A stretch of 64,000 bases of DNA from Octopus sinensis (GCF_006345805.1 NC_043007.1:64170001-64234000); one strand, 5' to 3'; numbered from the stretch's first letter, positions 12,790 to 47,903 are shown. A program made the numbers and translations. Notes: a model not told the origin generated them from the sequence alone.

Positions 12790-12873
12790 CTCATTACAGC
12801 TGTTTCTTACACATTCTTTAGAAGAAGAATGAGAACATTACTTCATCATAAAAAAACGTAATCATCAGATGAA
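12790..12873 (-). ncRNA. type I hammerhead ribozyme motif with intact core and extended helix II
   Basis: Minus strand: UUCAU-CUGAUGA-UUACG[long hairpin]UGUAA-GAAA-CAGCUG-UA-AUGAG. Helix I UUCAU/AUGAG, helix II base UUACG/UGUAA, palindromic helix III, GUA triplet. Confidence 0.7.
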
Positions 12874-13289
12874 ACGTAATTTTACAAACGAAAGAATATC
12901 CCAAGAATATAGCAGGGACATAGCTGAAGTCTGTTGAGGCTAATTATGAAATGGGAGAATGGCCAACAAGATTGGCTGTTGTAGGCATTAGAAGGTGGGG
13001 TTAGGTTGATAATGTAGTTTGTGAAGGCATGTAATATGATATTTAAGGTTAGCGACATGTGTGAAATAGGGGTCTACTAGACTGGTTCTTTGGTAGGCTA
13101 GAGGTGGGGTGTAGGTTATATTTTATTAAACTAGGCTTAGTATATTATTAAACTAAGCTTCCTCCTCCTCCACCTCGGTACAGTTAACTGAAGAAAGGCT
13201 AGCTACTTTGTTGCTCTGGAAGTCAAGTCATATTTGGTCTTAACAAGGTCGAAACTTTAGCTGTTTCCCCAAATCAGCTTCTATCATCC

Positions 13290-13820
13290 ATTTTGTGCTG
13301 TGAAAATTAGTCCCTTGGTACTGTTCTTGAGTCTTTTCATTGGCCTTTCTTCTTACTTGACAAAAGCTATGCTTGATATACAGAAAAGGGGCTAGAAGGA
13401 ACTCCATACTTTGTACCCAATGTAATGTATGGGTGCACAAAAGGTGAAAGAGAAAAGGAAGAGGAAGAGGGGGGGGACTATATATATAACAGATGTACAG
13501 AAGTAGTTAGCTGAAGGAGAACCCACAAAATACAATATTACAACCATTCATGAAAAGGCTCACTAGAAGTAATTGACAGCTTCTGTTAACTAAGTGACTT
13601 GATTAGTAGAGAATGGAATGTAGTAAAACACTGTAGTCAGAGTTTTGACTGGATGGAAAATGTTCAGGGAACTATTCTTCTATGGACAACAAATAGTTTC
13701 TGTATTGAAATGAGGGACAGGTTATATGACACTGTTGTGTAAAATGCTATGTTGCATAGTAATGAGACATGAGTACTCAATGCAGATGTGTGAATGTAGG
13801 TTAAAAGCAATTAAGTGATG
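13290..13820 (+). mobile_element. old RTE LINE fragment, same family as 2935-6175
   Basis: GARRNSILCTQCNVWVHKR at about 13390-13445, plus degenerate FRELL..L...MRDRLYD...AMLHSNET at about 13660-13770. Confidence 0.65.
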
Positions 13821-14116
13821 AGGCACAAGCAATGAGAAACTTAGCTAAAAGTTTCCCATACCAGACACAATTAACTGCTTTGTTAATATCAACGGAACCA
13901 TTACTTTTGGCCAACTTTCAAGAACAAGAAATCTCTGAAATATACTGAAGGAGAACAAGTCTTTGAAAGATCTGGAACTAAGCAGACTGTACTGAGAAAG
14001 AGAGAGTCAAAGTGATAAAGGTGTTGGTTGTTTATGGTACTTGTATATGTTTTAGATAATGGAAGTGAGAGTCAAGTTACAAACTCAAAGAATTTAATAT
14101 GCTTAATTTTTATTAC

Positions 14117-14196
14117 TTGTACTCCTTCAGTTTTGAATGAACTGCCTTCATTTCCAAGAGGGTTGAATCCCTGTAATTGGACACAGGCCTTCTTAT
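14117..14196 (-). CDS. candidate internal coding exon (IRRPVSNYRDSTLLEMKAVHSKLKEY)
   Basis: Acceptor CTATTCTTATTGAACTAATAG|, donor AA|GTAATA, 80 nt. A second frame (KKACVQLQGFNPLG...) is also open, so the frame is uncertain. Confidence 0.25.
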
Positions 14197-14701: not shown

Positions 14702-14748
14702 TGTGATATTTTGCACATTTGGATCAAACTCTGTACTGCCAATTACTT
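14702..14748 (-). CDS. candidate internal coding exon (VIGSTEFDPNVQNIT)
   Basis: Acceptor ATTTATTTCATTAG|, donor ACA|GTAATT, 47 nt, phase-compatible with the 14117-14196 candidate. Confidence 0.2.
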
Positions 14749-14963
14749 CTAATGAAATAAATTCAAAGAAACAAAGTTCTCATATACTGAACAAGTTGAC
14801 TGCATTTAGCTAAACTACAGATGCAAACAGTTTTCAGGCAGCTTAGGCAAATATCTTCTATCATAACCCTGGGCCACCCAAAGCATTGTAAGTGGATTTG
14901 GGAGATGGAAACTGAAACAAATCTTGTGTATGTGTGTGTGTGTGTGTGCGCGTGTGCACGCAC

Positions 14964-15000
<37 letters not shown>

Positions 15001-15097
15001 CATACACACACATATGCTTTTGAACAAACCATCAGTCAAGTATAGAGCATTTACTAAATTTCTGACAAGAAATTAAAATGACAAAAGAATAAAAAAT

Positions 15098-15260
15098 TGT
15101 CATGAACTTCATTAGCTTACAGCATATTGCATTTTATTTTTGAAGCTATGATGAAGCTATAGGGTAATACACAAGAACTCAACTATAATGCGTTGCACCT
15201 TAAAGCAGAAACAGCTGTAAGCTAATGAAGATCATGACATAATTTCTTATTCCTATTCTT
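15098..15260 (+). mobile_element. short foldback element with a degenerate hammerhead motif (copy A)
   Basis: 26-bp inverted repeat 15098-15123/15214-15239 (25/26 match); AAGCU-AUGAUGA-[helix II]-GAAA-CAGCUG-UA-AGCUA with a C3 to A change. Confidence 0.6.
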
Positions 15261-15439
15261 ATTCTTATGTCAGTTTCATTTCTTATTACTGCTCTGTACT
15301 TGACTGACACTTTGCACAGAGGCATATGTATATAGAATTCTAACACCAAGTTATTAGTATCACAATGCTTAAGCAAAATAATAAAATACAAAAACTCCCT
15401 TCTAGAAGAGTTCTAAAAACTAATAACCCTTTGACATTG

Positions 15440-15600
15440 GAAAATCTTATTTGGGAACTTCTCTAAGGAAAAACTGCACTTCATTTTTGAAGCTCCAATG
15501 AATCTATAGGGTGATACACAAGTATTCAACTTTGATGCATTGCACTGTATAGTAGAAACAGTTGTAACCTAATGTGGTTCACAATATAATTTCTTATCCC
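15440..15600 (+). mobile_element. diverged tandem copy B of the 15098 element
   Basis: CTATAGGGTGATACACAAGTATTCAACTTTGATGCATTGCAC...GAAACAGTTGTAACCTAATG aligns with copy A; GAAA boxes at 15208 and 15555. Confidence 0.6.
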
Positions 15601-15719
15601 CTTGTCATTTTAATTTCTTGTCCCACTGTGTGGAACCTTGGACAAGTGTTAACCAAAGCCTTGTGAGTGGATATGGTAGACAGAAACAGAAAGAAACCCT
15701 TCATATATATATATGACCA

Positions 15720-15925
15720 CATGTGTATCGTTGGCGATTTTTTTTTTTTTTCCTCCGTCTTCCCTTCTCTGGATCTTTCCATTTCCTATGTTTCTGACGA
15801 AGAGCTCTGCTCGAAATGTTAAACCCTCCTTCTTCCCTTCCTTCCTGAGCGTCCAATAATACTATATTTGTTCCACGTCCTCGCGTTGTTGTGTTTTCTC
15901 TTTGTTTTCATGTTTGGATTAACTA
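15720..15925 (+). mobile_element. Penelope-like LTR remnant with a minimal hammerhead (15790-15824)
   Basis: GUUU-CUGACGA-A-GAGC UCU GCUC-GAAA-UGUU-AAAC inside a pyrimidine-rich unit; no Penelope protein sequence seen nearby, so the PLE assignment is inferred. Confidence 0.55.
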
Positions 15926-15949
15926 TGTATATATATATATATATTTGTA

Positions 15950-15980
<31 letters not shown>

Positions 15981-16407
15981 GGTATTTAGAGATAGTAGTC
16001 CCCTTCATCCCACCATATAAAAAATTTTTTATTTAATTTAATAGTAGTAACTCATTTCTCAGCTACACGTGTTTCTTGAGGTTCTTTTACGGTTCTTTAA
16101 GTATGCACTGTTTTTCAGGAACCTTTCTTAAAATGTAACCCCAGTCATCAGGCTTCTAATAACTTTATCATAGTTCGATACCAAATACTATATTTTAATT
16201 TTAACATATAAGTATATGTATGTGTAAATAGGTTCGCTGATGATTGGGGTTACATTTTAAGAAAGGTTCCTGCAAAACACTGTGTGCTTAAGGAACCGTA
16301 AAAGAACCTCAAGAAACACGTGTAGCTGAGAAATGAGTAGTAAGTATTAAATTAAATTAAAATTCTTTTATATGGTGGGATGAAGGGGACTACTCTCTCT
16401 AAATAAC
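15981..16407. mobile_element. 427-bp foldback element (171-bp arms, 85-bp spacer) with a hammerhead motif in each arm
   Basis: Arms 15981-16151 and 16237-16407 are near-perfect reverse complements; each reads CUGAUGA...GAAACACGUGUA outward; embedded in (TA)n. Confidence 0.85.
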
Positions 16408-16479
16408 ATATATATTTCCTCATTGAGAATAATTTGAACCCCTGTGATGGCAGAATTTTTATTCCCTAATAAATAAAAT

Positions 16480-16532
<53 letters not shown>

Positions 16533-16579
16533 ATGTATGTATGTATGTAATGTATGTATGTATTACGTATATGTGTGTG

Positions 16580-17340: not shown

Positions 17341-18610
17341 CAGGGGTTGGACAAAATAATGGAAACACCTCGCATCATAGCATCATGATTTTGAAATACC
17401 TATAAAACCACCAAAAGCTTGTTTATTTTTATGTTTTGTGATTTATTATTAGTATTGCTTAATATATTTTGCTAAAATTACTGCTTCTTTTCAGATATCA
17501 GGAAAAGGTAATTAAAATTCATTAAAATAACAGATCTATCAGACTTTCAAAGGGGACAAGTTGTTGGTGTTCATATGGCAGGTGCTAGCATAATGAAAAC
17601 AGCCGAAATGTTTTGTGTATCAAGAAGTACTGTCTTGAAAGTAATGACAGCCTTTGCAAAAGAGGGAAAAACCTCCTCATCAATACAAAACTGCAGTAGA
17701 AAACCAAAACTTTCAGATAGGGACCATCAGACTCTTATGTGAATTGTTAGAAAGGATCACAAAAGTACAGCTCCCAAAATTACTGCAGAGCTTAATGACC
17801 ACCTTGAGAACCCAGTTTCCACAAAAGCTGTTTGCCAGCAGCTGCACAAAGCCAGATTTCACAGAAGTGCTGGAATCAGAAAACCACTACTTTAAAAAGC
17901 AAACGTTGCAAAGTGTTTAGAGTGGAGTAAAAACCTACAGAATTGGTCCCTAGAGCAGTGGAAGAATGTTATTTACTCAGATGAATCATCCTTTACCTCA
18001 TTTCCGACCACCGGCCGAGTAAACATGTGGAGACAGCCAAAAGAAGTATTTGACCCAGACTGCTTTCTTCCAACTGTTAATCATGGAGGAAGATCTGTGA
18101 TGATCTGGGTGTCTATACCTTGGAAATCTGCCATCCCAATGGTTTCCCTTCATGGCAGAATTAATAGTCAAGACTATTTAAGCATTTTATCTTATCAATT
18201 TCACCCTATAGTTGTGGAACTGTTTCCAGAGGGAAACACAATCTTTCAGGATGATAATGCATCAATTCACACAGCTAAAGTTGTTACTGAATAGCATGAG
18301 GAACATTCTAGTGAAGTTGAACATCTTATCTGGCCACCACAGTCCCCAGATCTTAATATTATTGAACATTTATGGTGCATTTTAGAAAAACAAGTAAGGA
18401 TTCGATATCCTCCACCATCATCACTACAAGAACTGGAGACTGTTTTAGCTTAAGACTGGACAAAAATTATTTTGGAAACAATTCAAACTTTGTATGACTC
18501 CATATCTCTGAGACTTCAAATTGTAATTACTGCCAAAAGTGGTCCTACCCCACATTAAAATAAATTTGTTTGAAATGTTAAGGTATTTCCATTATTTTGT
18601 CCAACCCCTG
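17341..18610 (+). mobile_element. complete Tc1-family DNA transposon, DD36E spacing (Incomer-like), inactivated
   Basis: About 30-bp TIRs CAGGGGTTGGACAAAATAATGGAAA(C/T)ACCT, TA on both sides, 1270 bp. Colinear 344-codon transposase frame 17527-18558 with ATG changed to ATA and four in-frame stops; motifs YSDES, FQDDNA, SPDLNIIE. Confidence 0.95.
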
Positions 18611-24742: not shown

Positions 24743-26029
24743 TTAGGCTGTCAAGAAAGTTCTTGCGGTTTTTAACCTTTAAATTCAGATGCACATATCT
24801 CGACTCAAACAAAACTTTATTAATCGAAATAAACACCATTAGAATCAACACACTTTTGCCAACGCGAAACAAGTTTATTTATGCCAGTAGCATAAAAGTC
24901 CTGCGTTCTGGTAGTGATGAAGTTGTTGAAGGCATGTTTGGCATCGTCTTGGTTTTTTAAGCATTTCTCACGCAGGAAGTTATTGAGATGCTTGAAAAAG
25001 TGGTAGTCGGTAGGTGAGAGGTCTGGTGAGTATGGCGGATGAGGCAGAGTTTCGTAGCCCAATTCGTTCAACTTCTGCAGGGTCAGTTGTGCGATGTGCG
25101 GCCAAGCGTTGTTGTGGAGAAGAATTGGTCCTTTTCTATTGACCAATGCTGGCTGTTGTTGTCGGAGTTTCTTATGCATTTCATCCATTTTCTGACAGTA
25201 CTTCTCCGCTGTAATGGTTTCGCCTGGATCCAAAAAGCTGTAATAGGTGAGACCGGCTGCAGACCACCAAACAGTCACCATGACCTTCTTTTGGTGCAAC
25301 TTTGATATCAAGAAGTACTGTGGAGCTTCCTCGGCAACCAACCACTGAGCTGAGTGTCACCAGTTGTCGTAAAGAATCCACTTCTCATTGTAAGTCACAA
25401 TCCAGTTGAGAAATGAGTCATTCTTGTTGCATAAAAGAAGGGAAGATGACACTTCAAAATGGTGTTTTTTTTAGTTGTCGTTCAATTCATGCAGCACCCA
25501 TTTCTCAAGTATTTTTATTTTTCCAATCTCTTTCAAGTGGTTGGAAATTGTTGTATACGTTATGTCTAATTCAGAAGCAAGCTCTCGAACAGTTGTGCAT
25601 GGATTGGCTTCCACTAAGGCTCTTAGTTGATTGTTGTCAACATCCGATGACCAACCACTACGTGTATCATCTTCAAGACTCTCGTCACTGCTACAAAATT
25701 TCTTGAACCACCATTGTGCTGTACGTTTATTAGTGGTTCCTGGGCCAAATGCATCATTGATATCGTGAGCTGTTTCAGCAGCTTTACGGCCTAGCTTGAA
25801 CTGGAATAAGAAAATTGTGCGAATTTGCTTTTTGTCCATGTTGTATTCAACGTTGCGGAAAAAATGGCCTAATTATTCAAAAAGTAAAAGACTAACACAA
25901 TTAGATAGAGCAAAAAAACAGGCTTTAAAATGATATATAAAGTCAAAGTAATTCAACGAAAATTAATTTGAAAGTATATCATTTAAAACCAAAATTTAAA
26001 ATTCTGCAAGAACTTTCTTGACAAACTAA
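24743..26029 (-). mobile_element. complete mariner transposon (Hsmar1/cecropia-like), inactivated
   Basis: TIRs TTAG(GC/TT)TGTCAAGAAAGTTCTTGC, 1287 bp. Transposase frame 25839-24820 (340 codons) with two in-frame stops; WVLHEL, YSPDLSPTDY; first and second catalytic Asp read as Asn (TYNEKW, HNNAW). Confidence 0.95.
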
Positions 26030-26169: not shown

Positions 26170-26570
26170 TTTCAGTCATTAAACTGCAGCGAAGGTGGAG
26201 TACTGCCTTAAAGAATTTTTAGTCAAATGAATCAACCCCAGGACTTATTTTTTGTGACGCCTGTTACTTATTCTATCAGTCCCTTTTGCCGAACTGCTAG
26301 GTTACAGGGACATAAACACACCAACATTAATTGTCAAGCAGTACTGGGAGATAACCAAGACACAAAGATTTACACACACACACACAGAAGGAGATAGATA
26401 GATAGATATTACAAGTTTCTTTCAGTTTCTGTCTACCAAATCCACTCACAAAGCTTTGGTCAACCCAAGGCTATAGTAGAAGACACTTGCCCAAGGTGCC
26501 ATGCAGTGGGACTGAACCCAGAGCCATATGGTAGGGAAACAAGCTTTGTACCACACGGTCACACCTGCAC
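26170..26570 (-). mobile_element. tRNA-derived SINE (family A)
   Basis: Reverse complement of the same head, body and tail as 1110-1530 and 38686-39090. Confidence 0.8.
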
Positions 26571-28355
26571 CTATACATATACATACATATATGTGTGTGT
26601 GTGTATAAATATATACATATTACAATTTCACTTAGGCAAAGGGATACTAATGACCAGTTGTTAGGACTTAGTATGCTTATGCTTTGTGTGTGTGTGACAT
26701 AGGTAGGTATGGTAGTGAAGTTAATAAGTTCACTTTGCAACCAAAGGTTTTTGGTTTTATGTTTAGTCTCATTGCATGGCATTTTGGGTAAGTTTCCTCT
26801 GCTATAGCCTTGTGAGTGGATGTGGAAACATGAAAATGCTCATCATGTATATATGTGTGTGTGTATGCATGAATATGTTTGAGTCTCCTTGTCTTCATAT
26901 TGTGCAATATGAGCACCTTTGATTTACCAGCAGTGTTGTTTCCATGTAAATATATCTGACCTGTCACCTTGATTGGAAACAGGTGAGGAATAGTATAAGG
27001 AAGAACATCCAGCTTTTGAAAATCTACCACAACAAATCAACAAAATGGAAAGGTGATTGTTAAAATGAAGATAATGACACACACACACATGTATGTGCAT
27101 ATCCCTCTCTCTCTTTCGGAGAGGCACTGAGCAGCTATATGCACACATACACACACGGCAGTAACTTCCGCCTACCGAATTCAATCACAAAGCTCCGGTC
27201 GGCTCGGGGCTATAGCGGAAGACACCTACCCAAAGTGCCACGCAGTGGGACTGAACTGGAAACCATGTAGCTAGGAAGCAAGCTCCCTAACCACACAGCC
27301 ATGCCCGTACACACATACACACACATGTACATACACATGCCTATATAACTATTTGTACTCACACACACCCACACAGGAACACTGACATGTAGTGCTTCAA
27401 TAAAGCTTATAAAATTTCACAAACTGCTACTCTGAATTTCATGTAATCAACCGTCAGAGAGATGTGAATGTTACGAACAATGAAATAGATCTTAAATGGT
27501 ATTAAACAATGTAATAAGCGTTATTTAGCAAATAATCAAACATTCAAGTACCATTTCATCTACCTTCTTTTGCATGTATGTGTTCACATATCTATTCATA
27601 GATAAAGCACCACCACCACCATCATCGTCCTCTTAACATGCACTTTCCCTTGCAGACATAGGTCAGATGTAATTTAAGGCAGATTTTCCATGGCCCAGTG
27701 TTCTTCCTTTCCTGTTTCATCTTCCTTCTTCCCTACTTATCATCCCTCATTCCTTGTTCTTCATTATATTTACCCTCTCATCCATTACCTATCTCTAATT
27801 GACTCTCACTCTCTATACACTCTTGCAAAATCTAATCACCCACACTTTCTGTTCTCCTGTCCCTACTCACTTCTTATCTTGAAGATCCACTCCGACATAT
27901 CATCGCTCCTATTTTTATTTCTTTCCAGCTCTAACTTTGCACCTCCCACACTAGCCCCATAGTATGTGTAACCAGGTAGCTCCTCTATGGCAAGAAACCT
28001 GTTCTATTCTGGCCCCACCTCTCACACAAAACCCCTTCATCCCCTAGCATAAAGCTATCTGCTGTAGTATTGCTCGGTGGATGGAAATTTTAGTCTTGCA
28101 GCCTGCATGGTGACCTCACTAATGCTGGTGCCATGAAAAAAGCACCCACTACATGCTACAACGTAATTGGTGTTAGGAAAGGCACCAAGTGTAGAAACCA
28201 TGCTAATGCAAACACTGAAGCATCATGTAGTCTTTGTACACATCAGACTGGAATGGGTTAGATCATAAATAATGATGATAATAAATACTTAAGGATTCTA
28301 TGCTCTGAATAAATGATAGGAAGAAAAATATTCATTATTTACATTTGATGAATAT

Positions 28356-28610
28356 TTGTTGTTAATACGTTTTGGCTGATATACCCTCCACCCTCAGGTG
28401 TCTTGGGGAAATTTCGAACCTGTGTTCTCATTCCTAAGGTATTTAAATTTTGAACGTAGGTTCAAAATTTCCCCAAGACACCTGAAGAAGGCTGGAGGGT
28501 ATATCAGCCAAAACATTGTGTTAACAACAAACAAGATGAGGACAAATATCCGTTGAATGTAAACAATGTAAATAATGTACATAATTCCTCATCTCTTAAA
28601 TAGAACTGTA
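28356..28610 (+). mobile_element. Penelope-like LTR remnant with inverted partial copy and degenerate minimal hammerhead
   Basis: Inverted arms 28356-28421/28458-28530; ACAC-CUGAAGA-A-GGCUG..CAGCC-AAAA-CAUU-GUGU at 28478-28521. Tail ATAATTCCTCATCTCTTAAAT.GAACTGTAAG also occurs near 24035. Confidence 0.6.
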
Positions 28611-36450: not shown

Positions 36451-38350
36451 AAAAGTGTGTGTGTGTATGGGCAGATGAGGAAATGTATGTACATATGTGG
36501 ATGTATCGGCATTTAACGTTCATGCTTCATCCTAACATGGGTTGGATTGGATGGAAGTGAAAGTATGTATAGACATTTGTACTTTTGGAGTAACAATTAA
36601 TGCATTTAAAAAAAAAGGGCTTCAAGAAACTATCAAGAATCACAGAAAGCAAGTCACTACATTTGGTTCAAGGGAAATGAGTTACGTATGAGAATCCTCT
36701 ATCTGTTTAATAAAATCAACAAGCACTGGGATATCACAAAAATATCTGGTTTATGCACTGCATTTGATTCAAAACATTTTGTGTTGTTGTGCAGCAGTAA
36801 CATCAAATTTATTGCTGTGTAACCCATGGGTAGCCTTCTTGGTGCAATAGAAAGGGGCTGAAAGACTTGGCTACATCACTGCCAGGGACTTAGCATGTTT
36901 ACTGGAAACGCGCTCTCGTATGTGTGTGCATGTATATGTATATTTATGTATGTGTACATATATGTATGCATATATGGAAATAGGTGTGTGTATACTTTTT
37001 TCTTTTTGTACATGCATATGCAACTGTGACAAAAAAAAAAAAAAAGAATTATGTTATGTATCATTCAAACATCCACTTTCCATGCTTAAATGGATCAAAT
37101 GCAGTAAAGTGAAGCAGGTTTTTCAAAGCTGAATGGGCTTCCCATTAATCTAACCTCATCAGTTTCCAAGTAAGGTAAAGTTACTCCGAGGCCTGATATA
37201 TCTTCATAGAAAATTGGAAACAAAGTAATGCATATGTGATGGTGAGGCATGTTTATAACACCCATTTCATATCAGGACATGAAGGCAAAATTCTTCACTC
37301 CCACTTCCACAAATTTACACATTTGTATAATACATACAAAACAACTCTTAATATGCTACAAATGGTTTCATGTAGATATATACAAAATATTCAGTGTATT
37401 TTAAATAGTTGGGAATATATGGAAGAGATGTCACTCTGGATCCAAAATGTACTTCTCCAAACATGTAGAATTCAGTTAAATATGATTATATGGCAACTAT
37501 AGCGAGTGTGACTAACTGCTGTGTTGGAGAAACATTCATCACTGCAGATTTCAATGGAAAGTGAAAGAGGCATATATATATATATGCTTACAATTTTATA
37601 CATACATATATAAATGTATACTTATTTAAGTATGTATATATTTATATATGTGCTTGTATATGTATGTATACAAATATATGTATATTTAATTTTTTTCTAT
37701 ATGGTATAATTGAATTATATCATTCTTAAATTGCTACATGATGGTTCTTCTCTACTTTATATACATATGTATATAATAGATATATATATGTATACATATC
37801 TATATATATATATATATAGATGTATATGTGTATGTAGATATATGTATATATACATATATATATGTAAATAAATGCATATATATGTATATATATATGTATA
37901 TATATGTATGTATATGTGTGTATATATATGTATATATCTGTATGTATATATATGTATGTATATGCATGTATATATGTGTATATCTGTGTGTATGTATGTA
38001 TATGTGTGTATATATCTGTGTATGTATGTATATGTGTGTATATATCTGTGTGTATGTATATATATGTGTATATATATACGTATGAAAATATTTGTATGTA
38101 TATATATATGTATATATATATATATATGTATGAAAGTATATGTATGTATATATATGTATGAAAGTATATGTATGTATATATATATATATGTATGAAAGTA
38201 TATGCATATATATATGAAAGTATATGCATATATATATGAAAGTATATGCATATATATATGAAAGTATATATATGTATATATATATGAAAATATATGTATA
38301 TATATGTATGAAAATATATGTATATATATATATATATGTGTAAATATATA

Positions 38351-38450
38351 NNNNNNNNNNNNNNNNNNNNNNNNNNNNNNNNNNNNNNNNNNNNNNNNNN
38401 NNNNNNNNNNNNNNNNNNNNNNNNNNNNNNNNNNNNNNNNNNNNNNNNNN
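38351..38450. other. assembly gap (100 N)
   Basis: Run of exactly 100 N, a typical placeholder for unknown length. Confidence 0.99.
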
Positions 38451-38483
<33 letters not shown>

Positions 38484-38529
38484 ATATATAGATATATATA
38501 TTGTATATATATATGTAGTATATATATAG

Positions 38530-38599
<70 letters not shown>

Positions 38600-38685
38600 T
38601 ATGTATATATATATTATGTATATATATGTATGTATATATATATATGTATATATATATATGTATGTATGTATATATATGTATATAC

Positions 38686-39090
38686 TCTTTACTCTTTTTT
38701 ACTCTTTTACTTGTTTCAGTCATTTGACTGCGGCCATGCTGGAGCACCGCCTTTAATCGAGCAAATCGACCCCAGTACTTATTCTTTTGTAAGCCCAGTA
38801 CTTATTTTATCGGTCTCTTTTGCCGAACCGCTAAGTAACGGGGACATAAACACACCAGCATCGGTTGTCAAACAATGCTAGGGGGACAAACACATACACA
38901 CACACATATATATATATACATATATACGACAGGCTTCTTTCAGTTTCCGTCTACCAAATCCACTCACAAGGCTTTGGTCGGCCCGAGGCTATAGTAGAAG
39001 ACACTTACCCAAGGTGCCACGCAGTGGGACTAACCCGAACCATGTGGTTGGTAAACAAGCTACTTACCACACAACCACTCCTGCGCCTAT
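38686..39090 (-). mobile_element. young tRNA-derived SINE (family A), full length
   Basis: Head GGCGCAGGAGTGGTTGTGTGGTAAG, CpG-rich body, tail (GAGTAAAA)n; nearly identical to 42432-42815. Confidence 0.9.
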
Positions 39091-39333
39091 ATATATATAT
39101 ATGTATACATATATATATATATATATGTATATATATATGTATATATATGTATACATATATATATATATATTATATATGTATATATATAATATATGTATAT
39201 ATATATATGTATATATACATATGTATATATATATATTGTATACATATATATATATGTATTTATATTATATGTATACATATATAATATATATATGTATATA
39301 TATATATATGTATACATAACATATATGTATATG

Positions 39334-39369
<36 letters not shown>

Positions 39370-39436
39370 GGTCTGTATATATATATATTATGTATATATA
39401 TATATTATATATATATATATACATATATATGTATAC

Positions 39437-39478
<42 letters not shown>

Positions 39479-39630
39479 GTATACATATATATATAGGTAT
39501 ATATATATATATGTATACATATATATATATATGTATAATATATATATGTATACATATATATATATATGTATACTACATATATATATATACATATATATAT
39601 ATAGAATATGTATACATATATATATATATC

Positions 39631-39840
39631 GCAATGGCCTAGTGGTTAGGGCAGCGGACTTGCGGTCGGAGGATCGCGGTTTCGACTCCCAGACCGGGCG
39701 TTGTGTGTGTTTATTGAGCGAAAAAAACACCTAAAAGCTCTACGAGGCTCCGGCAGGTGGTGGTGATCCCTGCTGTACTCTTTCACCACTCTAAAAGGCG
39801 GTGCTCCAGCATGGCCGCAGTCAAATGACTGAAACAAGTA
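39631..39840 (+). mobile_element. tRNA-headed SINE joined to the family A tail
   Basis: A box TGGCCTAGTGG and B box GGTTTCGACTCC; from about 39793 it switches to AAAGGCGGTGCTCCAGCATGGCCGCAGTCAAATGACTGAAACAAGTA. Confidence 0.8.
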
Positions 39841-39841
39841 C

Positions 39842-39875
<34 letters not shown>

Positions 39876-39957
39876 TGTATATATTATATATGTATGTATA
39901 TATATAATATATTATATGTATGTATATATATATATATATGTATGTATGTATAATATG

Positions 39958-40030
<73 letters not shown>

Positions 40031-40688
40031 GTATGTGTATATATATATGTATATATATATATGTATGTGTATATATGTATGTATGTATATATATGTATTA
40101 TATATATATATGTATGTGTATATATATATGTATGTATGTATATATATGTATTATATATATATGTATGTGTATATATGTATATATATATATGTATGTATGT
40201 ATATATATGTATTATATATATATGTATGTGTATATATGTATGTTGTATATATATGTATTATATATATATGTATGTGTATATACGTATTATTTTATATGTA
40301 TGTATGTATATATATATATGTATGTATGTATATATATGTATTATATATATATGTGTGATATATGTATTATATATATGTATGTATGTATTATATGTATTAT
40401 AATATATGTATGTATATATATGTATATATATATATGTAGTAGTATATATGTATATATATATATGTATGTATATATATGTATTATATATTATTATGTATGT
40501 ATGTATATGTATGTAGGATATATATGTATGTATGTATATATATTATTTGTATGTATGTATGTATGTATATATGTATGTATGTATGTAATGTATATGGTAT
40601 GTATGTATGTATATATATATATAGTGTGTATGTGTATATGATATAGGTAGTATGTATATATGTATGTATATGTATATATGTATGTATT

Positions 40689-40724
<36 letters not shown>

Positions 40725-40769
40725 GTATGTATGTAGATTATATTTGTATGTATATATATATATGTATGT

Positions 40770-40809
<40 letters not shown>

Positions 40810-40885
40810 CTATGTATGTATATATATATGGTATATATATATGTATGTATATATATATATGTATGTATATATATATATGTGTATG

Positions 40886-40922
<37 letters not shown>

Positions 40923-41392
40923 GTATGTGTATGTATATATATGTATGTATATATATGTATGTGTATGTATATATATGTATGTGTATGTATATATATGTAT
41001 GTGTATGTATATGTATGTATATATATATATATATATGTATGTATATATATATATATGTTTGTATGTATGTATGTATATGTATGTATGTATGTATGTATGT
41101 ATATGTATGTATATATATGTATGTATGTATATGTATGTATGTATGTATATATATATATGTATGTATGTATATATATGTATGTATATATGTATATATATGT
41201 ATGTATGTATATATATATATGTATATATTTGTATGTATGTATATATATACGTATATGTATGTATGTATATATATATGTATGTATGTATGTATGTGTATAT
41301 ATATATATATATGTATGTATGTATATATATATGTATGTATGTATGTGTATATATATATATATATATATGTATACATACCTAAATATATATAT

Positions 41393-41432
<40 letters not shown>

Positions 41433-42431
41433 GTGTATGCATAAATGTGTGTGTGTGTGTATAAACATATGTATTGTAAAGTGGTTGGCATTAGAAAGGG
41501 CATCCAGCTGTAATAAGGATGTCAAAACAGATAGTCCTTCGCTTCGCCACCGCCTTCAAAGTGTCCAGCCCATACCAGCATGGAAAATGAATGTTAAATA
41601 ATGATGACAGTTATATGTGTATATATGTACATTGTATGTGTATATATAAATATGTATTCATGTAAGTATATGATGATGATGATGAATGTGTGTTTATATA
41701 TGTGTGTATGCATGTATACATGCATATATGTATATAAGTATGTGTATATATACATTTCTGCGTGTGTGTATACATATATAATTTTAATTATTATTACCTA
41801 ATATCAGTTAGTTGTGATGTATGATAGGTGTTTTTTATATTGTTGAATATATATGTCCTGATTTGCCTTATATTTTTAACTGTCTATTATATATATATTG
41901 CTCTTGAAATCCATTGACATACAAGACTTACATAATAAAAGCAATGTATGGATATATATAATATACTTTACACACACACATAACTAGTTGATACTAAGAA
42001 AATTGCCATACACCAACCCAATTGCCTGTTTATAAGTATATGTGATGTATATTCTGAACTATGTCACTGTCATTAAAAGAATTGTGTTTTGTTGGTTTTT
42101 TTCATTATACTGTATTGAAACTGGCTGTAATATGTTGAGTAATTGTACTTTATCCAGTGTTATTAATTTGACATAATTTACCTTATAATTGTATTTATTC
42201 TGTTCAGAATTAAGATGTCTTATAGAGGATATTATTTATTATCAATAATTTCAATTCCTACTTCTGTCAGTAAACCAAATAGCAGTCAGGATTTAATCAA
42301 CTGCACCACTCCTCTGCAATACGTAGCTTTGTGACTGTAACAGTTATTAAGTTGTTGAAATTGCTACAAACTGTCAGACTACAAACTATTTTCTCAAATT
42401 TGTAAGATTCTATTTTTTAAAAAATTTTTTT

Positions 42432-42815
42432 TTTTACTTGTTTCAGTCATTTGACTGCGGCCATGCTGGAGCACCACCTTTAGTCGAGCAAATCGACCCC
42501 GGGACTTATTCTTTGTAAGCCCAGTACTTATTCTATCGGTCTCTTTTGCCGAACCGCTAAGTGACGGGGATGTAAACACACCAGCATCGGTTGTCAAGCA
42601 ATGCTAGGGGGACAAACACAGACACACACACATACATATATATACATATATACGACAGGCTTCTTTCAGTTTCCGTCTACCAAATCCACTCACAAGGCAT
42701 TGGTCGGCCCGGGGCTATAGCAGAAGACACTTGCCCAAGATGCCACGCAGTGGGACTGAACCCGGAACCATGTGGTTGGTTAGCAAGCTACTTACCACAC
42801 AGCCACTCCTGCGCC
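42432..42815 (-). mobile_element. young tRNA-derived SINE (family A), full length
   Basis: Same structure as 38686-39090. Confidence 0.9.
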
Positions 42816-43584: not shown

Positions 43585-45135
43585 TCATCATCATCATCTA
43601 ATGTCTGCTTTCCATGCTAGCATGGGTTGGACAATTTGACTGAGGTCTGGCGAACCAGATGGCTGCACCAGGCTCCAATCTGATCTAGCAGAGTTTCTAC
43701 AGCTAGATGCCCTTCCTAACGCCAACCACTCCGAGAGTGTAGTGGGTGCTTTTACGTGCCACCGGCATGAGGGCCAGTCAGGCAGTACTGACAGTGGCCA
43801 TGCTCAAATGGTGCTTTTTATGTGGCTCCTGCACAAGAGCCAGTTCAGTGGCACTGGCAACAACCTTGCTCGAATGTTTTTTCACATGCCAGTAGGGCGA
43901 TGCAGGTAACGATCACGCTCGAATGGTGCTTTTTACGTGCCATCAGCATTGAGGCTAGCTTGTTGCTCTGGCAACGATCACTCTCATATGGTACTCTTAG
44001 CGCCCCACTAGCATGGATGCCAGTCATCAGATTTGATTACGATTTCACTTGCCTCAACAGGTCTTGGTAAGCAGAGTTTAGTGTCCTATGAAGGAAAGGT
44101 ACGCATAAGTGGGCTGGTTGCACCCCCTGGCATAGGCCACAAGGTTATGGTCTCTCTTGAGCTTGCCGCGTCTTCTCAAGCACAGCATATTTCCAAAGGT
44201 CCCAGTCACTAGTCATTGCCTCGGTGAGGCCCAATGTTCAAAGGTCATGCTTCACTACCTCATCCCAGGTCTTCCTGGGTCTACCTCTTCCACAGGTTCC
44301 CTCAACCGCTAGGGTGTGGCACTTTTTCACACAGCTGTCTACATCCATTATTGCCATATGACCATACCAGCGCAGTCATCTCTTTTGCACACCACATCTG
44401 ATGCTTCTTAGGTCCAACTTTTCTCTCAAGGTACTAACACTGTCAAGTATGCACACTGACATTACACATCCATCGGAGCATACTGGTTTCATTCCTTGTG
44501 AGCTTACGCATGTCCTCAGCAGTCACGACCCATGTTTCACTGCCATGTAGCATGGCTGTTCGTACACATGCGTCATACAGTCTATCTTTTACTCTGAGTG
44601 AGAGGCCCTTTGTCACCAGCAGAGGTAAGAGCTCTCTGAACTTTGCCCAGGGTATTCTTATTCTAGCGGCTACACTTTCAGCGCACCCTCCCCTGCTACT
44701 GACTTGGTCACCTAGGTAATGGAAGCTATCAACTACTTCTAGTTTTTCTCCCTGGAATGTGGCAGAAGTTGTTCTCTGCACATTTTCAGTGTTTATTGCT
44801 CCTGAGCATCTGCCACATACAAAAGACTATCTTCCCAGTTAGCCTTCCTTTGATATTGCTGCACCTCTTATGTGTCCATTGCTTACACTGGGTACATCTT
44901 ATATAGTTTCTATTTATGCCTTTTCTACAGATTGAGCAGGGCCATCTTCCTGAAGGGATTTGTGGTTTGTCTGCCTTCCTACTTATTAAGACTTTGGTTT
45001 TAGCTAGGTTGACTCTAAGGCCCTTCGATTCTAATCCTTGTTTTCACATTTGAAACTTCTCCTCCAGTTCTGATAGTGACTCAGCATTTAGAGCAAGGTT
45101 GTCAGCATAGAGGAGCTCCCAGGGGCATCCTGTCT
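43585..45135 (-). mobile_element. RTE LINE, 5'-truncated, same family as 2935-6175
   Basis: Starts at GCPWELLYADNLAL; includes the Cys-rich insert, FHYLG...AMLHGSETW (44443-44781), the 3' UTR and the (GAT)n tail. Confidence 0.95.
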
Positions 45136-47581
45136 TAAGACTGTGTGTGTGTGAGAGAGAGAGAGAGAGAAAGAAGAAGACATACTGAATACACTGTTAT
45201 TTCTGGTTCTAGATTTCATTTTCATAAAATATTTTAAGTTCTCAATCTGCTCACAGTTCTGGACTACTCAAATGAGAAAGGTAAAACTGAAAATGAACAT
45301 TTGTGATAGAATTTGAAAACAAGGTACTGAACTAAAAGAAAAATAAAACTGAAGTTAATAGTCCAGCTCACAGCTAAGCAACAGCTCACAGCTCACAGCT
45401 AAGCAAATATTAGTTAAATATATTTATTTTTGCTATTTTGTTCAAGAATTTTGATGCTCAAAAGCTATGTTGAAGTGAGAATATGAGATTGACAATTGAA
45501 AGATAAAGATTTTGATTGTTATTAGATCACCTCTAGTGCTTCACTTAAAGTCTTTCCTCATGAAAATCAAAATTATGATCCACTAATTGTTGAGTTCATT
45601 CCCCTTTTTCAACTTGTCCATTTATGCCAAAGATTCCTTCTCATTGAGGCTAAAAATGTCTATGTATATTTTAAATTGAATACATGTATGGTATATATAT
45701 GGTTTTAGTTAGGTTTTCTAATTACATCAGAAGCTAAGTTAAATGATTAAAATGTGATTATAGGTATTTACTTAAAAGCAAAGCTGTTGGAATTGGTTAT
45801 TGAGTTTCTGGAGTCAGAGCTGGTAAAACTTCACGGTCTTTAACTTTGAAATTTCCTATTCAAGTTACAGATTTGGATGTAATCAAATCAGATTTAAAGG
45901 CCTTGGTAGAAGCAATTCTGTTTCTAAGAACAAGATATTTGTAAACTTTGGACTTGGATTTTTGATTTAAATCCTATTCTACAGAGAGAATGTTTTTTGA
46001 TGAATTTTGTTAAGATATAAACTTGTCAGTCCTTTACAGTGTAATTTTTATATCATGTTACTTTCACTTCAATTTTATATTCAAACAGTGCTTAAATCTC
46101 AAAAGGAAGAGTTATGTATCTAACTGAGTTTATTCCTTTCAATCATCTAGATATGTATATGTGTGGTTGGAAGTAACAGCACATAGGTTAGTAATGTATA
46201 GCAGGAAGATTGTGTGATACATAACCCATCTTTGAACATCTGAATTATAGAATATGGGTTGGAAATAACTCCTCCAGCAATTCAGCAACTTATGCAATGC
46301 AGGAAACTTCCAAGAGATAGGAGACATGTAATTTTGCTGTTTCATACCAAATATGTTTGAAAAATTTGCTGATGGCAAAAGTTCAACTTCTCCAACACAA
46401 GATCAATCACCTACTCCAAAGTAAAAGTATTACTTATCAAATAACTCTAAAGAATATCAAACAATCAACCATCTTATGTTCTAGGGAGGAAGCCTCTATG
46501 CAGTTGCTTGACCTGCTTGAAACAGCAGCCAGATTGCCCTCAAGTTATACTCTACCATCATAAAAAAGAAACAAGAATAGTCCTAAATACACTAAATTTT
46601 AATACATGTTGATATAGTTATGGTTGAACTGTCTTTGATCACAAGTTTTCCTTTTTAGGATTAACTTGGAGCTAAATAACAACCACCACTATTGCAACAA
46701 ACATCCTACATGCAGACATAAATACTAGGAATTTTCTTCAATACCTCTACAACATTCATTACAGTCAGTCTCCAATCTCCTTAAGGAACTACAATGAATA
46801 CAAAGTAGGGCACTTTGCATAATCATAAACTGCAAATGGATCCCAACTTCAGTCTACTTTCACAAGGTAGCACTCAATCTAGACACACAATAGATACCTA
46901 CATATAATAGTACTGATAACCTCATTTGTCTCAAACGTTGTTCAGAACACTACTAGAGTCACATGCAGAGGAACCACAACAATTGTGCTCCAATCCTGTT
47001 CACTTTGTTGTCTCCTCCACTATGGCCAACATCAGAACTTACAGGCTTGCAAGTGAGCAAATGGAAAAAACTTCTACATGGTCACCTGACTTTTCAAGAA
47101 ATAGCCAAATTTTCATCAATTCATACCGTATCATTAAAAAATGAAAAAGCATTTTATATAAATAAAATTCTCAATTTGCCCAAAATAAAAATAAAATACA
47201 AGCTTCACTACTGGAATGCTGGTAGATCATTGGCCTGCTTTATTAGAGCTGATCTAAAGTTAAACAAAAGCAGGTATTCAAGAACACACTATACAGCAGA
47301 GAGGGAAAAGAAACCCTGCCTAGATTGACACACTACTCCATACAATAACTCACTGCATGTTGTCATCAACTAGGTGGAGGCACAGCATATTTGGAGCATA
47401 TCTATGAATCTCACAGTTCTATAGGTCTACTCAGTTTGATTTGGGCTACATTATAATAGCTACAATTTAATTTATGTTTTGAGGTGAGGTATTTATAAAT
47501 TAATTTATTTTTGTTTATATATCTACCTATCTATCTATCTATATATATATATAATCTCAGAACCATAAAAATTCAGGAGGT

Positions 47582-47903
47582 GTGAAAGGTGAATATATTT
47601 ATTAAACCACTTGTCATCCTTAGGATTACAGCTGTTTTGCAGTCTTCGTCATATAATAATTATTTCAGTGTATAATGAATTGAAGCATTGGTGTAACCAT
47701 GATGTTCTAGCATCTGATGAGTAGCTTTCTTTATTTGTATTGATTTGTAAATATACAATTGTATTGGATAATTCATAACATGCATATTAAAGCAAACTGT
47801 AAAATATTTTATCATACACTGAAACTAGTACATAATAAAGTCTGCAAAACAGCTGTAACACTAAGGATTACAAGTGGTTAAGTAAATATAGCCACCTCTC
47901 ACA
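47582..47903 (+). mobile_element. foldback element (~95-bp diverged arms) with a degenerate long-helix-II hammerhead
   Basis: Arms 47582-47680/47806-47903; UAGCAU-CUGAUGA(47714)-GUAG...CUGC-AAAA-CAGCUG-UA(47857). Confidence 0.55.

What the first reader, a model, noticed from the sequence alone, without database searches (positions are those of the whole stretch)
12790..47903. Candidate system: hammerhead-ribozyme foldback mini-elements that look like MITEs
At least six separate loci (12790, 15098/15440, 15790, 15981, 28356, 47582) share no obvious long homology but have the same grammar. Each has helix I strand, CUGANGA, helix II, GAAA, a self-complementary helix III (CAGCUG, CACGUG or CG), a GUA/GUU triplet, and the second helix I strand. 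Four also carry an inverted partial or complete copy of the ribozyme plus downstream tail immediately upstream. Established: type I hammerheads with short palindromic helix III act as dimers, occur in Penelope-like element LTRs and non-autonomous retrozymes, and Penelope insertions often have inverted truncated LTRs. Inference: these 140-430-bp units are non-autonomous ribozyme-processed retroelements rather than DNA MITEs. The 60-125-nt helix II arms are much longer than the minimal PLE motifs I know. Five motifs cluster in 3.6 kb (12.8-16.4 kb).
Basis: partly seen in the sequence, partly recalled or inferred. Interest (0 to 1): 0.88.

Follow-up and report, generated by a model that had tools for sequence, protein, structure and literature searches.

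The report
Hammerhead-ribozyme mini-retroelements in an octopus genome
These short repeats in an octopus genome carry real but mostly decayed hammerhead self-cleaving RNA motifs of the kind already known from Penelope-like retroelements, so they are new examples of a known thing, not a new system.

Summary
The window is octopus DNA, rich in transposons and microsatellites.

Class 1 (D at 15790-15824; F at 28317-28576) is a compact minimal hammerhead with the hallmarks of Penelope-like-element (PLE) min-HHRs: a bulged A after A9, a G10.1-C11.1 pair, and GAAA-CG-U-H. Copies found in Octopus bimaculoides keep the core. The window's F copy is decayed, but its relative is intact. Helix I covaries, and the ribozyme block is the best-conserved part of the D element.

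Class 2 (A, B, C, E, G) shares GAAA-CAGCUG/CACGUG-UA. A 6-8 bp helix II closing stem abuts both core boxes, but 53-125 nt separate the boxes and helix I is weak. Only A and E have intact cores.

The "MITE-like" foldbacks B, E, F and G are head-to-head inverted copies of units that have no terminal inverted repeats of their own. Several sit in (TA)n tracts. That is the PLE insertion architecture. No PLE ORF lies in the window, and Rfam gives no hammerhead hit.

Verdict: new members of a known kind. The long helix II class may be a variant. The assembly gap lies inside a microsatellite and touches no locus.

The parts
12790..12874 (-). Locus A, a solo class 2 hammerhead-like motif. Helix I 5' strand UUUCAU 12874-12869. 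CUGAUGA 12868-12862. Helix II 12861-12807 (55 nt, closing stem UUACGU/GUGUAA). GAAA 12806-12803. CAGCUG 12802-12797. U-A 12796-12795 (predicted cleavage after A12795). Helix I 3' strand AUGAG 12794-12790.
   Evidence: It is the only hit of the strict descriptor; the null is 0.017 per window. Fold z-score is -2.55 and helix II forms. No Rfam hammerhead hit; weak C/D snoRNA-like hits with E 0.06-1.
15001..15123 (-). Inverted 5'-truncated copy of the B/C unit. It starts inside the CAGCUG palindrome, and its 3' tail points outward toward the (TG)n(TA)n tract at 14925-15004.
   Evidence: nhmmer: B/C profile positions 91-205 match 15123-15001 on the minus strand, E 1e-25. Self-BLAST.
15124..15334 (+). 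B unit with a decayed class 2 hammerhead. AGCU, then AUGAUGA (15148-15154; C3->A), bulged A, helix II GCUAUAGGGU...ACCUUAAAGC, GAAA 15208-15211, CAGCUG, U-A 15218-15219, AGCU.
   Evidence: With its inverted copy it folds into a 26-bp stem, z-score -6.5.
15472..15625 (+). C unit, a solo copy of the B family (78% identical). Its core reads CCAAUGA (15495-15501), GAAA 15555-15558, CAGUUG, U-A. It has no inverted partner. From about 15620 onward the sequence is a different abundant repeat.
15719..15925 (+). D unit with an intact compact min-hammerhead. GUUU 15790-15793. CUGACGA 15794-15800. Bulged A 15801. GAGC-ucu-GCUC 15802-15812. GAAA 15813-15816. UG 15817-15818. U16.1 15819. U17 15820 (predicted cleavage site). 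AAAC 15821-15824. Flanked by (TA)n on both sides.
   Evidence: A homologous copy in O. bimaculoides (L002 6735-6955) and a diverged copy (L002 6230-6470, minus strand) both keep the motif. Covariation; block conservation.
15971..16236 (-). E, minus-strand copy. The arm is 16151-15971 plus an 85-nt unique stretch (16152-16236) that may be its 5' extension. CUGAUGA 16151-16145. Helix II 69 nt. GAAA 16075-16072. CACGUG. U-A 16065-16064. Helix I 3 bp. The 3' end abuts the (TA)n tract at 15924-15980.
16237..16419 (+). E, plus-strand copy, starting exactly at CUGAUGA 16237-16243. Helix II closing stem UUGGGGUU/AACCUCAA. GAAA 16313-16316. CACGUG. U-A 16323-16324. No helix I.
28317..28440 (-). F, left (minus-strand) copy, with a decayed min-hammerhead: CUGAGGG 28397-28391 ... 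CAGCC AAAA CG U A (28378-28366).
28442..28576 (+). F, right copy. CAC, CUGAAGA 28482-28488, bulged A, GGCUGG-9 nt-CAGCC, AAAA (G12->A) 28510-28513, CA, U-U 28516-28517, GUGUU.
   Evidence: The intact relative at L002 17500-17633 reads CUGAUGA A GGCUGG..CAGCC GAAA UG UU GUG. The MFE fold is the hammerhead helix I plus helix II.
47567..47661 (-). G, inverted 5'-truncated copy carrying AAAACAGCUGUA (47638-47627) and the tail.
47662..47919 (+). G, longer copy. CUGAUGA 47714-47720. Closing stem GUAG...CUGC. 125 nt between the boxes. AAAA (G12->A) 47846-47849. CAGCUG. U-A 47856-47857. No helix I, and the fold is no more stable than shuffles.

Best explanation
These loci are short (about 150-260 bp) non-autonomous retroelement copies, most of them decayed. 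Each carries one type I hammerhead ribozyme motif of the minimal kind found in the pseudo-LTRs of Penelope-like elements (PLEs) and in animal non-LTR retrozymes.

Inferred life cycle (none of these steps was observed):
1. A transcript containing two copies pairs them through the palindromic helix III (ACGU in D/F; ACAGCUGU or ACACGUGU in A/B/E/G) into a double hammerhead.
2. It cleaves after U16.1-H17.
3. The unit RNA is copied into the genome in trans by a PLE reverse transcriptase/GIY-YIG nuclease at nicks in (TA)n tracts.
4. That process typically leaves 5'-truncated copies and a head-to-head inverted partner, which is what makes B, E, F and G look like MITE foldbacks.

Shown here: the motifs, their conservation and covariation in D and F, the inverted-copy architecture, and monomers without terminal inverted repeats.

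There are two ribozyme classes. Class 1 (D, F) is compact and canonical for PLE min-HHRs. Class 2 (A, B, C, E, G) has 53-125 nt between the core boxes.
For: Organism: octopus, from LINE RT hits to O. vulgaris and O. bimaculoides and shared DNA repeats with both.

D family:
- The O. bimaculoides copy keeps CUGAUGA-A-GAGC..GCUC-GAAA-CG-U. A third, diverged copy keeps it with one core change.
- Helix I pair 2.4-1.4 is G-C, A-U and C-G in the three copies.
- The hammerhead block is 78% identical between D and D2, against 40-54% in the flanks.

F family: the O. bimaculoides solo copy has an intact core, whereas the window copy has G12->A.

Structure counts on the five D/F motifs:
- 94% of cells are paired.
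- All four helix I pairs change on both sides.
- 0 of 500 shuffles reach the observed value; slid controls give 29-44%.

Chance controls.

Class 2: every family has a 6-8 bp stem directly next to both core boxes, with unrelated sequences. The 12-mer GAAACAGCUGUA is shared. CUGANGA lies within 170 nt upstream in 3 of 4 independent families, against about 0.05 expected per site from the counts.

Architecture:
- Head-to-head inverted copies with 3' tails outward in B, E, F and G.
- D, C and the L002 F copy are solo and have no terminal inverted repeats.
- (TA)n flanks D (all copies), both ends of E and the inverted B copy.
- These match the published PLE features: inverted 5'-truncated copies, a (TA)n insertion bias, and dual min-HHRs on opposite strands 100-700 bp apart (PMC8557442, PMC4209133).
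Against: - No Rfam hammerhead family matches any locus, even at E<=10 in 121-601-nt searches.
- No PLE RT/GIY-YIG ORF is in the window. The only RT is an APE-type LINE.
- Four of seven loci have core substitutions that should abolish catalysis. One D copy has G at position 17.
- Class 2 helix I is 0-5 bp. The G fold is no better than shuffles (z +1.4) and E is marginal (z -1.3).
- No second copies of the class 2 families were found in 58 kb of other octopus DNA, so covariation within those families could not be tested.
- Part of the D/F cross-family covariation follows from the descriptor used to find them.
- E has TA next to both termini, which also fits a Tc1/mariner-type MITE.
Confidence: 0.65

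Rival explanations
1. Some or all of the foldbacks (above all E and G) are ordinary DNA-transposon MITEs or foldback elements, and their hammerhead-like words are incidental. They would move by cut-and-paste using a Tc1/mariner-type transposase.
For: Long inverted arms of 93-179 nt. TA dinucleotides next to both E termini. Tc1-like and mariner transposase remnants in the window. No Rfam hammerhead hit. Helix I is missing in E+ and G. The separate foldback at 50036-50816 shows no hammerhead.
Against: F, D and C exist as single-orientation monomers without terminal inverted repeats. In each foldback the arms are oriented with the hammerhead-sense 3' tails outward. The inverted copies are truncated at different internal points, and G's two copies are of unequal length. 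E keeps both core boxes, an 8-bp helix II closing stem and a palindromic helix III in both arms. The permuted-core control for that combination is only weakly significant: 2 hits against a mean of 0.35, and 6.7% of controls do as well.
Confidence: 0.15
2. The class 2 motifs (A, B, C, E, G) are relatives that share a conserved sequence block (AAACAGCTGTAA) for some reason other than catalysis, such as a protein-binding site or plain common descent. The upstream CUGAUGA would then be coincidence. Only D and F would be true hammerheads.
For: B, C and G lack an intact core. Helix I is weak. Hammerheads with 53-125-nt helix II inserts are not in the published PLE descriptors; Naiad cases with boxes 35-50 nt apart were only labelled 'HHR_half_core' (PMC8557442). 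A has a 10-nt direct repeat, CTGATGATTA, at 12781-12790 and 12859-12868, so its first CUGAUGA could come from flanking DNA.
Against: Stems directly adjacent to both boxes occur in every family with unrelated sequences. A meets the full strict descriptor. At each position of the core-1 box at least one of B and C keeps the consensus letter, so an intact CUGAUGA ancestor is parsimonious. A-U and C-G pairs capped by a palindromic tetraloop is the helix III form described for invertebrate type I hammerheads (PMC7229834).
Confidence: 0.15
3. All the matches are chance products of a loose motif in AT-rich, hairpin-rich repetitive DNA.
For: CUGANGA occurs at the chance rate (36 in 128 kb). GAAA is everywhere. 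Without helix requirements the excess is modest (6 against 1.7).
Against: Permuted-core and simulated controls. Conservation of the motif between species, with compensatory changes.
Confidence: 0.04

Closest known systems
Minimal hammerhead ribozymes (min-HHRs) of Penelope-like elements (Cervera & De la Pena 2014, PMC4209133)
   Same: Type I topology. Short helix I (3-5 bp). An unpaired nucleotide between A9 and 10.1. A G10.1-C11.1 pair. No real helix III, only a palindromic ACGU that allows dimers. Many dispersed solo copies. Pairs on opposite strands 100-700 bp apart. High sequence heterogeneity between families. D and F match on all of these points.
   Different: D has a 4-bp helix II where 6-8 bp is typical. 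No full PLE with RT and GIY-YIG was seen next to any copy here. Class 2 has a 2-bp helix III with a tetraloop and 53-125 nt between the core boxes, which lies outside the published descriptor.
Animal non-LTR retrozymes (Cervera & De la Pena 2020, PMC7229834; Li et al. 2026 preprint, 10.64898/2026.07.22.740005)
   Same: Small (150-450 bp), AT-rich, non-coding units, each with one type I hammerhead that has a weak palindromic helix III. They are proposed to be non-autonomous derivatives of PLE pseudo-LTRs. The class 2 helix III (A-U and C-G pairs capped by a palindromic tetraloop) matches the invertebrate form described there.
   Different: Retrozymes occur as head-to-tail tandem arrays and have canonical helices I and II with loop-loop contacts. 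Here the copies are solo or head-to-head inverted. Only B and C lie in the same orientation, 347 bp apart, with unrelated sequence between them. No tandem array is present.
PLE insertion architecture (Craig et al. 2021, PMC8557442)
   Same: 5'-truncated copies. An inverted 5'-truncated copy abutting the 5' end, giving inverted repeats. Insertion bias for microsatellites, (TA)n in Naiads. 'HHR_half_core' cases with core boxes 35-50 nt apart.
   Different: That paper reports that Naiads lack canonical hammerheads and survive in cephalopods only as old remnants. Which PLE clade, if any, mobilised the octopus units is unknown.
MITEs / foldback DNA elements
   Same: Size, AT-richness, long inverted arms and a hairpin-forming potential that even triggers plant-miRNA Rfam models.
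   Different: The unit itself has no terminal inverted repeats (solo D, C and the L002 F copy). The arms are whole-unit inverted duplicates of unequal length. No matching transposase termini were found.

Membership tests
Hammerhead ribozyme, type I | Conserved catalytic core: C3-U4-G5-A6-N7-G8-A9, G12-A13-A14, A15.1-U16.1, and H17 not G | tested here: met
   Met at A, D and both E arms in the window, and at the F copy in L002. Not met at B, C, G and window F, which carry 1-2 substitutions. The D copy in L002 has G at position 17.
Hammerhead ribozyme, type I | Three helices around the core, supported by covariation | tested here: met
   This holds for D and F only. Helix I has all 4 pairs changing on both sides, 94% of cells paired, and 0 of 500 shuffles as high. 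Helix II forms in every copy. Helix III exists only as a dimer-forming palindrome. For class 2 the result is inconclusive: helix II is present in all families, but helix I is 0-5 bp and there are no family copies for covariation.
Hammerhead ribozyme, type I | Match to curated covariance models (Rfam Hammerhead_1, HH9, HH10, II, 3) | tested here: not met
   No hammerhead family appears at gathering score or among the matches listed at E<=10, including 121-nt and 601-nt searches. I attribute this to the missing helix III hairpin and the long helix II, which those models penalise. That is inference, not a test.
Hammerhead ribozyme, type I | Site-specific self-cleavage after H17 | not testable with these tools
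   This needs transcription and cleavage assays or RNA-end mapping.
PLE-type minimal hammerhead (min-HHR) | Unpaired nucleotide between A9 and 10.1; G10.1-C11.1; palindromic 15.2-16.2; short helix I; grouped into families with compensatory changes | tested here: met
   D (3 copies) and F (2-3 copies). In class 2, G has G10.1-C11.1 and B/C have a bulged A, but A and E have U10.1-A11.1.
PLE-type minimal hammerhead (min-HHR) | Location in the pseudo-LTR of an element encoding RT plus a GIY-YIG endonuclease | tested here: not met
   No GIY-YIG domain or PLE-type RT was found in the window. Pfam was run on ORFs and a motif scan covered all six frames of the window, L001 and L002. Most published min-HHRs are also solo, so this lowers the link to a particular PLE, not the motif assignment.
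Animal non-LTR retrozyme | Head-to-tail tandem repeats of 150-450 bp, each with one hammerhead | tested here: not met
   No tandem array was found in 12-17 kb apart from microsatellites. B and C lie in the same orientation 347 bp apart, but only about 190 nt of them is homologous.
MITE (DNA transposon derivative) | Terminal inverted repeats intrinsic to every copy, with a constant target-site duplication | tested here: not met
   D, C and the L002 F copy are single-orientation units without terminal inverted repeats. For E and G there are no other copies, so the test is inconclusive; E has TA at both ends.

The most novel reading that the evidence does not exclude
Class 2 (A, B/C, E, G) is a distinct octopus lineage of hammerhead ribozymes. 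A 53-125-nt structured insertion replaces the usual short helix II, helix I is reduced to a few pairs, and the ribozyme is still active as a dimer through the 8-nt palindrome ACAGCUGU/ACACGUGU. It would be mobilised mainly as head-to-head foldback dimers. A CUGANGA-like second box 1-5 nt after the cleavage site, seen in every family, would be part of that mechanism.
Probability: 0.2. Interest if true: 0.6.

Novelty: new member of a known kind. Interest (0 to 1): 0.4.

Why it matters
The result shows that many "MITE-like" hairpin repeats in an octopus genome are inverted dimers of ribozyme-bearing retroelement fragments. This matters for repeat annotation, because such foldbacks are easily filed as DNA transposons or as miRNA-like hairpins. 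It adds cephalopods to the animals with abundant PLE-type minimal hammerheads. I found no paper in the searchable library that reports them for Octopus. It also gives concrete families (D, F) on which the unresolved question of what these low-activity ribozymes do for Penelope-like elements could be tested. If the long helix II class proves active, it would widen the accepted hammerhead descriptor, and genome searches with the usual 7-17-nt spacer would be shown to miss a whole class.

Tried and rejected
1. Rfam at gathering score and at E<=10 on the whole window and on three sub-regions gave no hammerhead. It returned only microsatellite and hairpin-driven miRNA-model hits, plus weak C/D snoRNA-like hits at A. 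I rejected the snoRNA reading of A because E 0.06-1 in a 242-nt search space is not significant window-wide.

2. My first reading was that the loci were unrelated foldbacks with chance words. I dropped it after the permuted-core controls and the O. bimaculoides copies.

3. Exact-word scans of metagenome and prokaryote genome collections with a D-family 18-mer returned only chance matches with no extended homology.

4. Loci fetched through LINE RT relatives from two ENA samples and from Argonauta hians share no DNA repeats with the window, so they were useless for copy hunting. Two further protein searches gave no usable octopus loci.

5. A covariance model built from the three D motifs finds only those three. 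It is too sequence-specific to reach F or class 2. A 12.8-bit hit at L002 4261-4297 has no helix II and was discarded.

6. I read the T14 run at 15740-15752 as a poly(A) tail of a minus-strand SINE. I rejected that because homology with the L002 copy runs through and beyond it.

7. I considered B and C as a retrozyme tandem dimer. Only about 190 nt is shared and the spacer is unrelated.

8. I at first took C's distal tail and its (TA)n to be part of the unit. It is a separate abundant repeat.

Full report
**Setting.** The window is animal DNA with about 35% G+C, full of TA/TG microsatellites and transposon remains. A LINE reverse-transcriptase ORF at 4566-5126 finds its closest named relatives in Octopus vulgaris (88% identity over the matched 43% of the query), O. 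bimaculoides and Argonauta hians. I fetched two loci through those proteins: L001 (O. vulgaris, 20.9 kb) and L002 (O. bimaculoides, 37.5 kb). Both share many DNA repeats with the window at 76-90% identity. Loci from two ENA samples and from Argonauta share none. The source is therefore an Octopus species or a close relative.

**The gap.** Positions 38351-38450 are N. Both sides are TA-rich microsatellite, part of a 37.7-41.8 kb low-complexity block. No locus of the finding is nearer than 9 kb, so no claim depends on continuity across the gap.

**Checking the observation.** CUGANGA occurs 36 times on the two strands, roughly the chance number, so the word alone means nothing.

I wrote a strict type I descriptor. 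It requires helix I of at least 4 bp next to the core, CUGANGA, a helix II closing stem of at least 4 bp with up to 160 nt between the boxes, GAAA, a palindromic insert of 0-8 nt, and U followed by a non-G base.
- It hits one place only: locus A on the minus strand, 12868->12795.
- The same scan with the letters of the core words permuted gives a mean of 0.017 hits per window.
- 100 first-order Markov simulations give none.

A compact descriptor (boxes no more than 30 nt apart) gives three hits in the 122 kb of octopus DNA: D in the window, and D and F copies in L002. The mean in 539 permuted-core controls is 0.019. Allowing one core mismatch adds the window's F copy and a third D-like copy: 5 hits against 0.9 +/- 0.9.

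The 12-mer AAACAGCTGTAA with at most one mismatch occurs six times against 0.55 expected, with 0 of 100 shuffles reaching six. Five of these six lie in loci A, B, C and both arms of G. E carries the variant GAAACACGTGTA in both arms.

The grammar is therefore real and above chance, but not every locus has it intact.
- Intact cores: A, D, and both arms of E.
- F in the window reads CUGAAGA...AAAA (right arm) and CUGAGGG...AAAA (left arm).
- G reads CUGAUGA...AAAA.
- B and C read AUGAUGA and CCAAUGA where CUGANGA should be.

Rfam finds no hammerhead at any threshold tried.

**Class 1: D and F are bona fide PLE-type minimal hammerheads.** D reads (15790-15824, plus strand): GUUU CUGACGA A GAGC-ucu-GCUC GAAA UG U U AAAC.

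BLAST found a 76%-identical copy in O. bimaculoides, independently of any motif search (L002 6735-6955). It reads AUUU CUGAUGA A GAGC-ucc-GCUC GAAA CG U G AAAU. A third, much more diverged copy (L002 6230-6470, minus strand) reads CUUU CUGUGGA A GAGC-guag-GCUC GAAA CG U U AAAG.
- The fourth helix I pair is G-C, A-U and C-G in the three copies, so it shows two fully compensated changes.
- Between D and the diverged copy the hammerhead block is 78% identical, while the flanks are 40-54%.

The window's F locus is a foldback with a decayed core. The family has a solo copy in O. bimaculoides (L002 17500-17633) that reads CAC CUGAUGA A GGCUGG-9 nt-CAGCC GAAA UG U U GUG, which is an intact core. The differences at positions 15.2/16.2 (CG, TG, CA) look like CpG decay of an ancestral ACGU palindrome. 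That last point is inference.

On an alignment of the five D/F motifs:
- 94% of cells pair.
- All four helix I pairs change on both sides.
- No shuffle out of 500 reaches the observed values.
- Sliding the partner by 1-3 columns drops pairing to 29-44%.

A caveat applies. The D-versus-F part of that covariation is partly built in by the descriptor. The within-D changes are not.

The MFE folds of three of the five short RNAs are exactly helix I plus helix II around an open core.

**Class 2: A, B, C, E and G.** These share GAAA-CAGCUG-UA (CACGUG in E, CAGUUG in C, AAAA for GAAA in G). That gives A15.1-U16.1 and C15.2-G16.2 capped by a palindromic tetraloop, the helix III form described for invertebrate type I hammerheads (PMC7229834).

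In each family a stem sits directly against both core boxes, and its sequence is unrelated between families:
- A: UUACGU/GUGUAA
- B: GCUAUAGGGU/ACCUUAAAGC
- E: UUGGGGUU/AACCUCAA
- G: GUAG/CUGC followed by CUUUAUU/AAUAAAG

The boxes are 55, 53, 53, 69 and 125 nt apart. CUGANGA lies within 170 nt upstream on the same strand in three of four independent families. From the density, about 0.05 is expected per site, which puts the chance of three out of four near 4e-4. That estimate is post hoc.

At each position of the box at least one of B and C keeps the consensus letter, so an intact ancestral CUGAUGA is parsimonious.

Several points weaken class 2:
- Helix I is 5 bp in A, 4 in B, 3 in E(-), and absent in E(+) and G.
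- The G RNA folds no better than shuffles (z +1.4), and E is marginal (z -1.3).
- No further copies of these families turned up in L001 or L002, so within-family covariation could not be tested.
- A is flanked by a 10-nt direct repeat, CTGATGATTA (12781-12790 and 12859-12868), so its upstream box could be flank-derived.

I rate class 2 as probably hammerhead-derived (about 0.6), with several copies catalytically dead.

**Why they look like MITEs.** The foldbacks are real: E has 179-nt arms at 91% complementarity, G 93-nt arms, F about 125-nt arms, and B about 120 nt. In every case the two arms are whole-unit copies placed head to head, with the hammerhead-sense 3' tails pointing outward.

The inverted copies break off at different internal points, and G's two copies are clearly unequal in length:
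- B's inverted copy begins inside CAGCUG (profile positions 91-205).
- G's begins about 14 nt upstream of AAAACAGCUGUA.
- E's plus arm begins exactly at CUGAUGA.

The same units also exist as single-orientation copies without any terminal inverted repeat: D, C, and F in L002.

This is the structure described for Penelope-like element insertions: 5' truncation, an inverted 5'-truncated copy abutting the 5' end, and an insertion bias for microsatellites, (TA)n in Naiads (PMC8557442). Dual min-HHRs 100-700 bp apart on opposite strands were noted in Schistosoma (PMC4209133).

On microsatellite targets:
- D is flanked by TATATA in both species, and D2 ends in (TA)n.
- Both outer ends of E, and the 3' end of D, lie in one (TA)n tract at 15703-15980. 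That tract follows a copy of another abundant repeat at 15620-15716.
- B's inverted copy ends at the (TG)n(TA)n tract at 14925-15004.
- F does not follow this rule.

**What is missing.** No PLE ORF is in the window. Pfam finds only an APE-type LINE (Exo_endo_phos, RVT_1, PHD), a mariner and HTH fragments. A six-frame scan for GIY-YIG and YxDD motifs finds nothing PLE-like. The link to PLEs therefore rests on motif type and insertion architecture, not on physical linkage. Cleavage, circular RNA and transcription cannot be addressed with these tools.

**Mechanism, with status.**
- Shown: the units carry type I hammerhead motifs whose core and helix I are preferentially conserved (D, F), and the foldbacks are inverted duplications of TIR-less units.
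- Inferred from the named literature: activity needs two copies that pair through the palindromic helix III. Cleavage after U16.1-H17 trims unit RNAs. A PLE RT/GIY-YIG enzyme supplied in trans copies them at nicked (TA)n sites, producing truncated and inverted copies.
- Most copies in this window are relics with core mutations.

**Comparison and novelty.** D and F are new members, in Octopus, of the PLE-type min-HHR kind published in 2014. The idea that such short units are non-autonomous PLE derivatives is also already in print (PMC7229834; 10.64898/2026.07.22.740005). I found no paper in the searchable library reporting hammerheads in Octopus.

Class 2, with 53-125 nt between the core boxes, falls outside the usual descriptors. 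Craig et al. used a 7-17-nt spacer and labelled cases with boxes 35-50 nt apart 'half core' (PMC8557442). It would be a new variant if shown to be active.

The finding is a correct recognition of a known phenomenon rather than a new system.

Noticed in passing
window 12790-12783, 16063-16057 / 16325-16331, 15222-15228, 47860-47866: In every class 2 family a second CUGANGA-like box follows the predicted cleavage site within 1-5 nt: A GUA-AUGAG-CUGAUGA, E GUA-G-CUGAGAA, B GUA-AG-CUAAUGA, C GUA-AC-CUAAUGU, G GUA-ACA-CUAAGGA. It leaves no room for a helix I hairpin, so this is not a permuted hammerhead. I have no explanation.
   Followed up: partly
window 12781-12790 and 12859-12868: A 10-nt direct repeat, TAATCATCAG (CTGATGATTA on the minus strand), brackets 68 nt of locus A and contains both CUGAUGA boxes. 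It could be a target-site duplication or a more-than-unit-length copy. The same stretch gives weak C/D-box snoRNA-like Rfam hits (E 0.06-1).
   Followed up: partly
window 50036-50816: This is the largest foldback in the window: 299-nt arms at 92% complementarity with a 166-nt spacer. Short related pieces lie at 49512-49579 and 51135-51233 (the latter inverted), and weaker ones at 20962, 46622, 57697 and 60730. A CUGAUGA sits at its left end only, and I saw no hammerhead grammar. It is probably a different kind of element.
   Followed up: partly
window 1162-1277, 1539-1654, 14875-14933, 15620-15716, 26399-26512, 26756-26856, 38916-39030, 42642-42756; L001 1212-1326, 20352-20435: An abundant interspersed repeat, about 400 bp judging from the longest matches to L001. 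Two of its copies (14875-14933 and 15620-15716) are followed by TA/TG microsatellite. The (TA)n tract that hosts D and E follows the copy at 15620-15716.
   Followed up: partly
window 3400-6224 and 44030-45130 (minus); 24823-25872 (minus); 17512-18291 (plus): Transposon remains. Two copies of an APE+RT(+PHD) LINE family that is also multi-copy in L001, a Mos1-type mariner transposase split into two ORFs, and a Tc1-like transposase fragment.
   Followed up: partly
L002 6600-6730: A near-perfect 130-bp hairpin (about 60-nt arms) lies between the two head-to-head D-family copies in O. bimaculoides. It is unrelated in sequence to the hammerhead units and looks like a true MITE.
   Followed up: no
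proteins P0002, P0019, P0132: LINE reverse transcriptases 54-74% identical to the octopus ones are deposited as Escherichia coli, Salmonella enterica and Herbaspirillum proteins on contigs of 0.6-1.5 kb. They are most likely animal DNA contaminating bacterial assemblies.
   Followed up: no
window 37700-41800: A 4-kb block of TA/TATG-type microsatellite, about 20% G+C with strong GC skew, contains the assembly gap. It produces dozens of spurious mir-297/mir-466-type Rfam matches.
   Followed up: no
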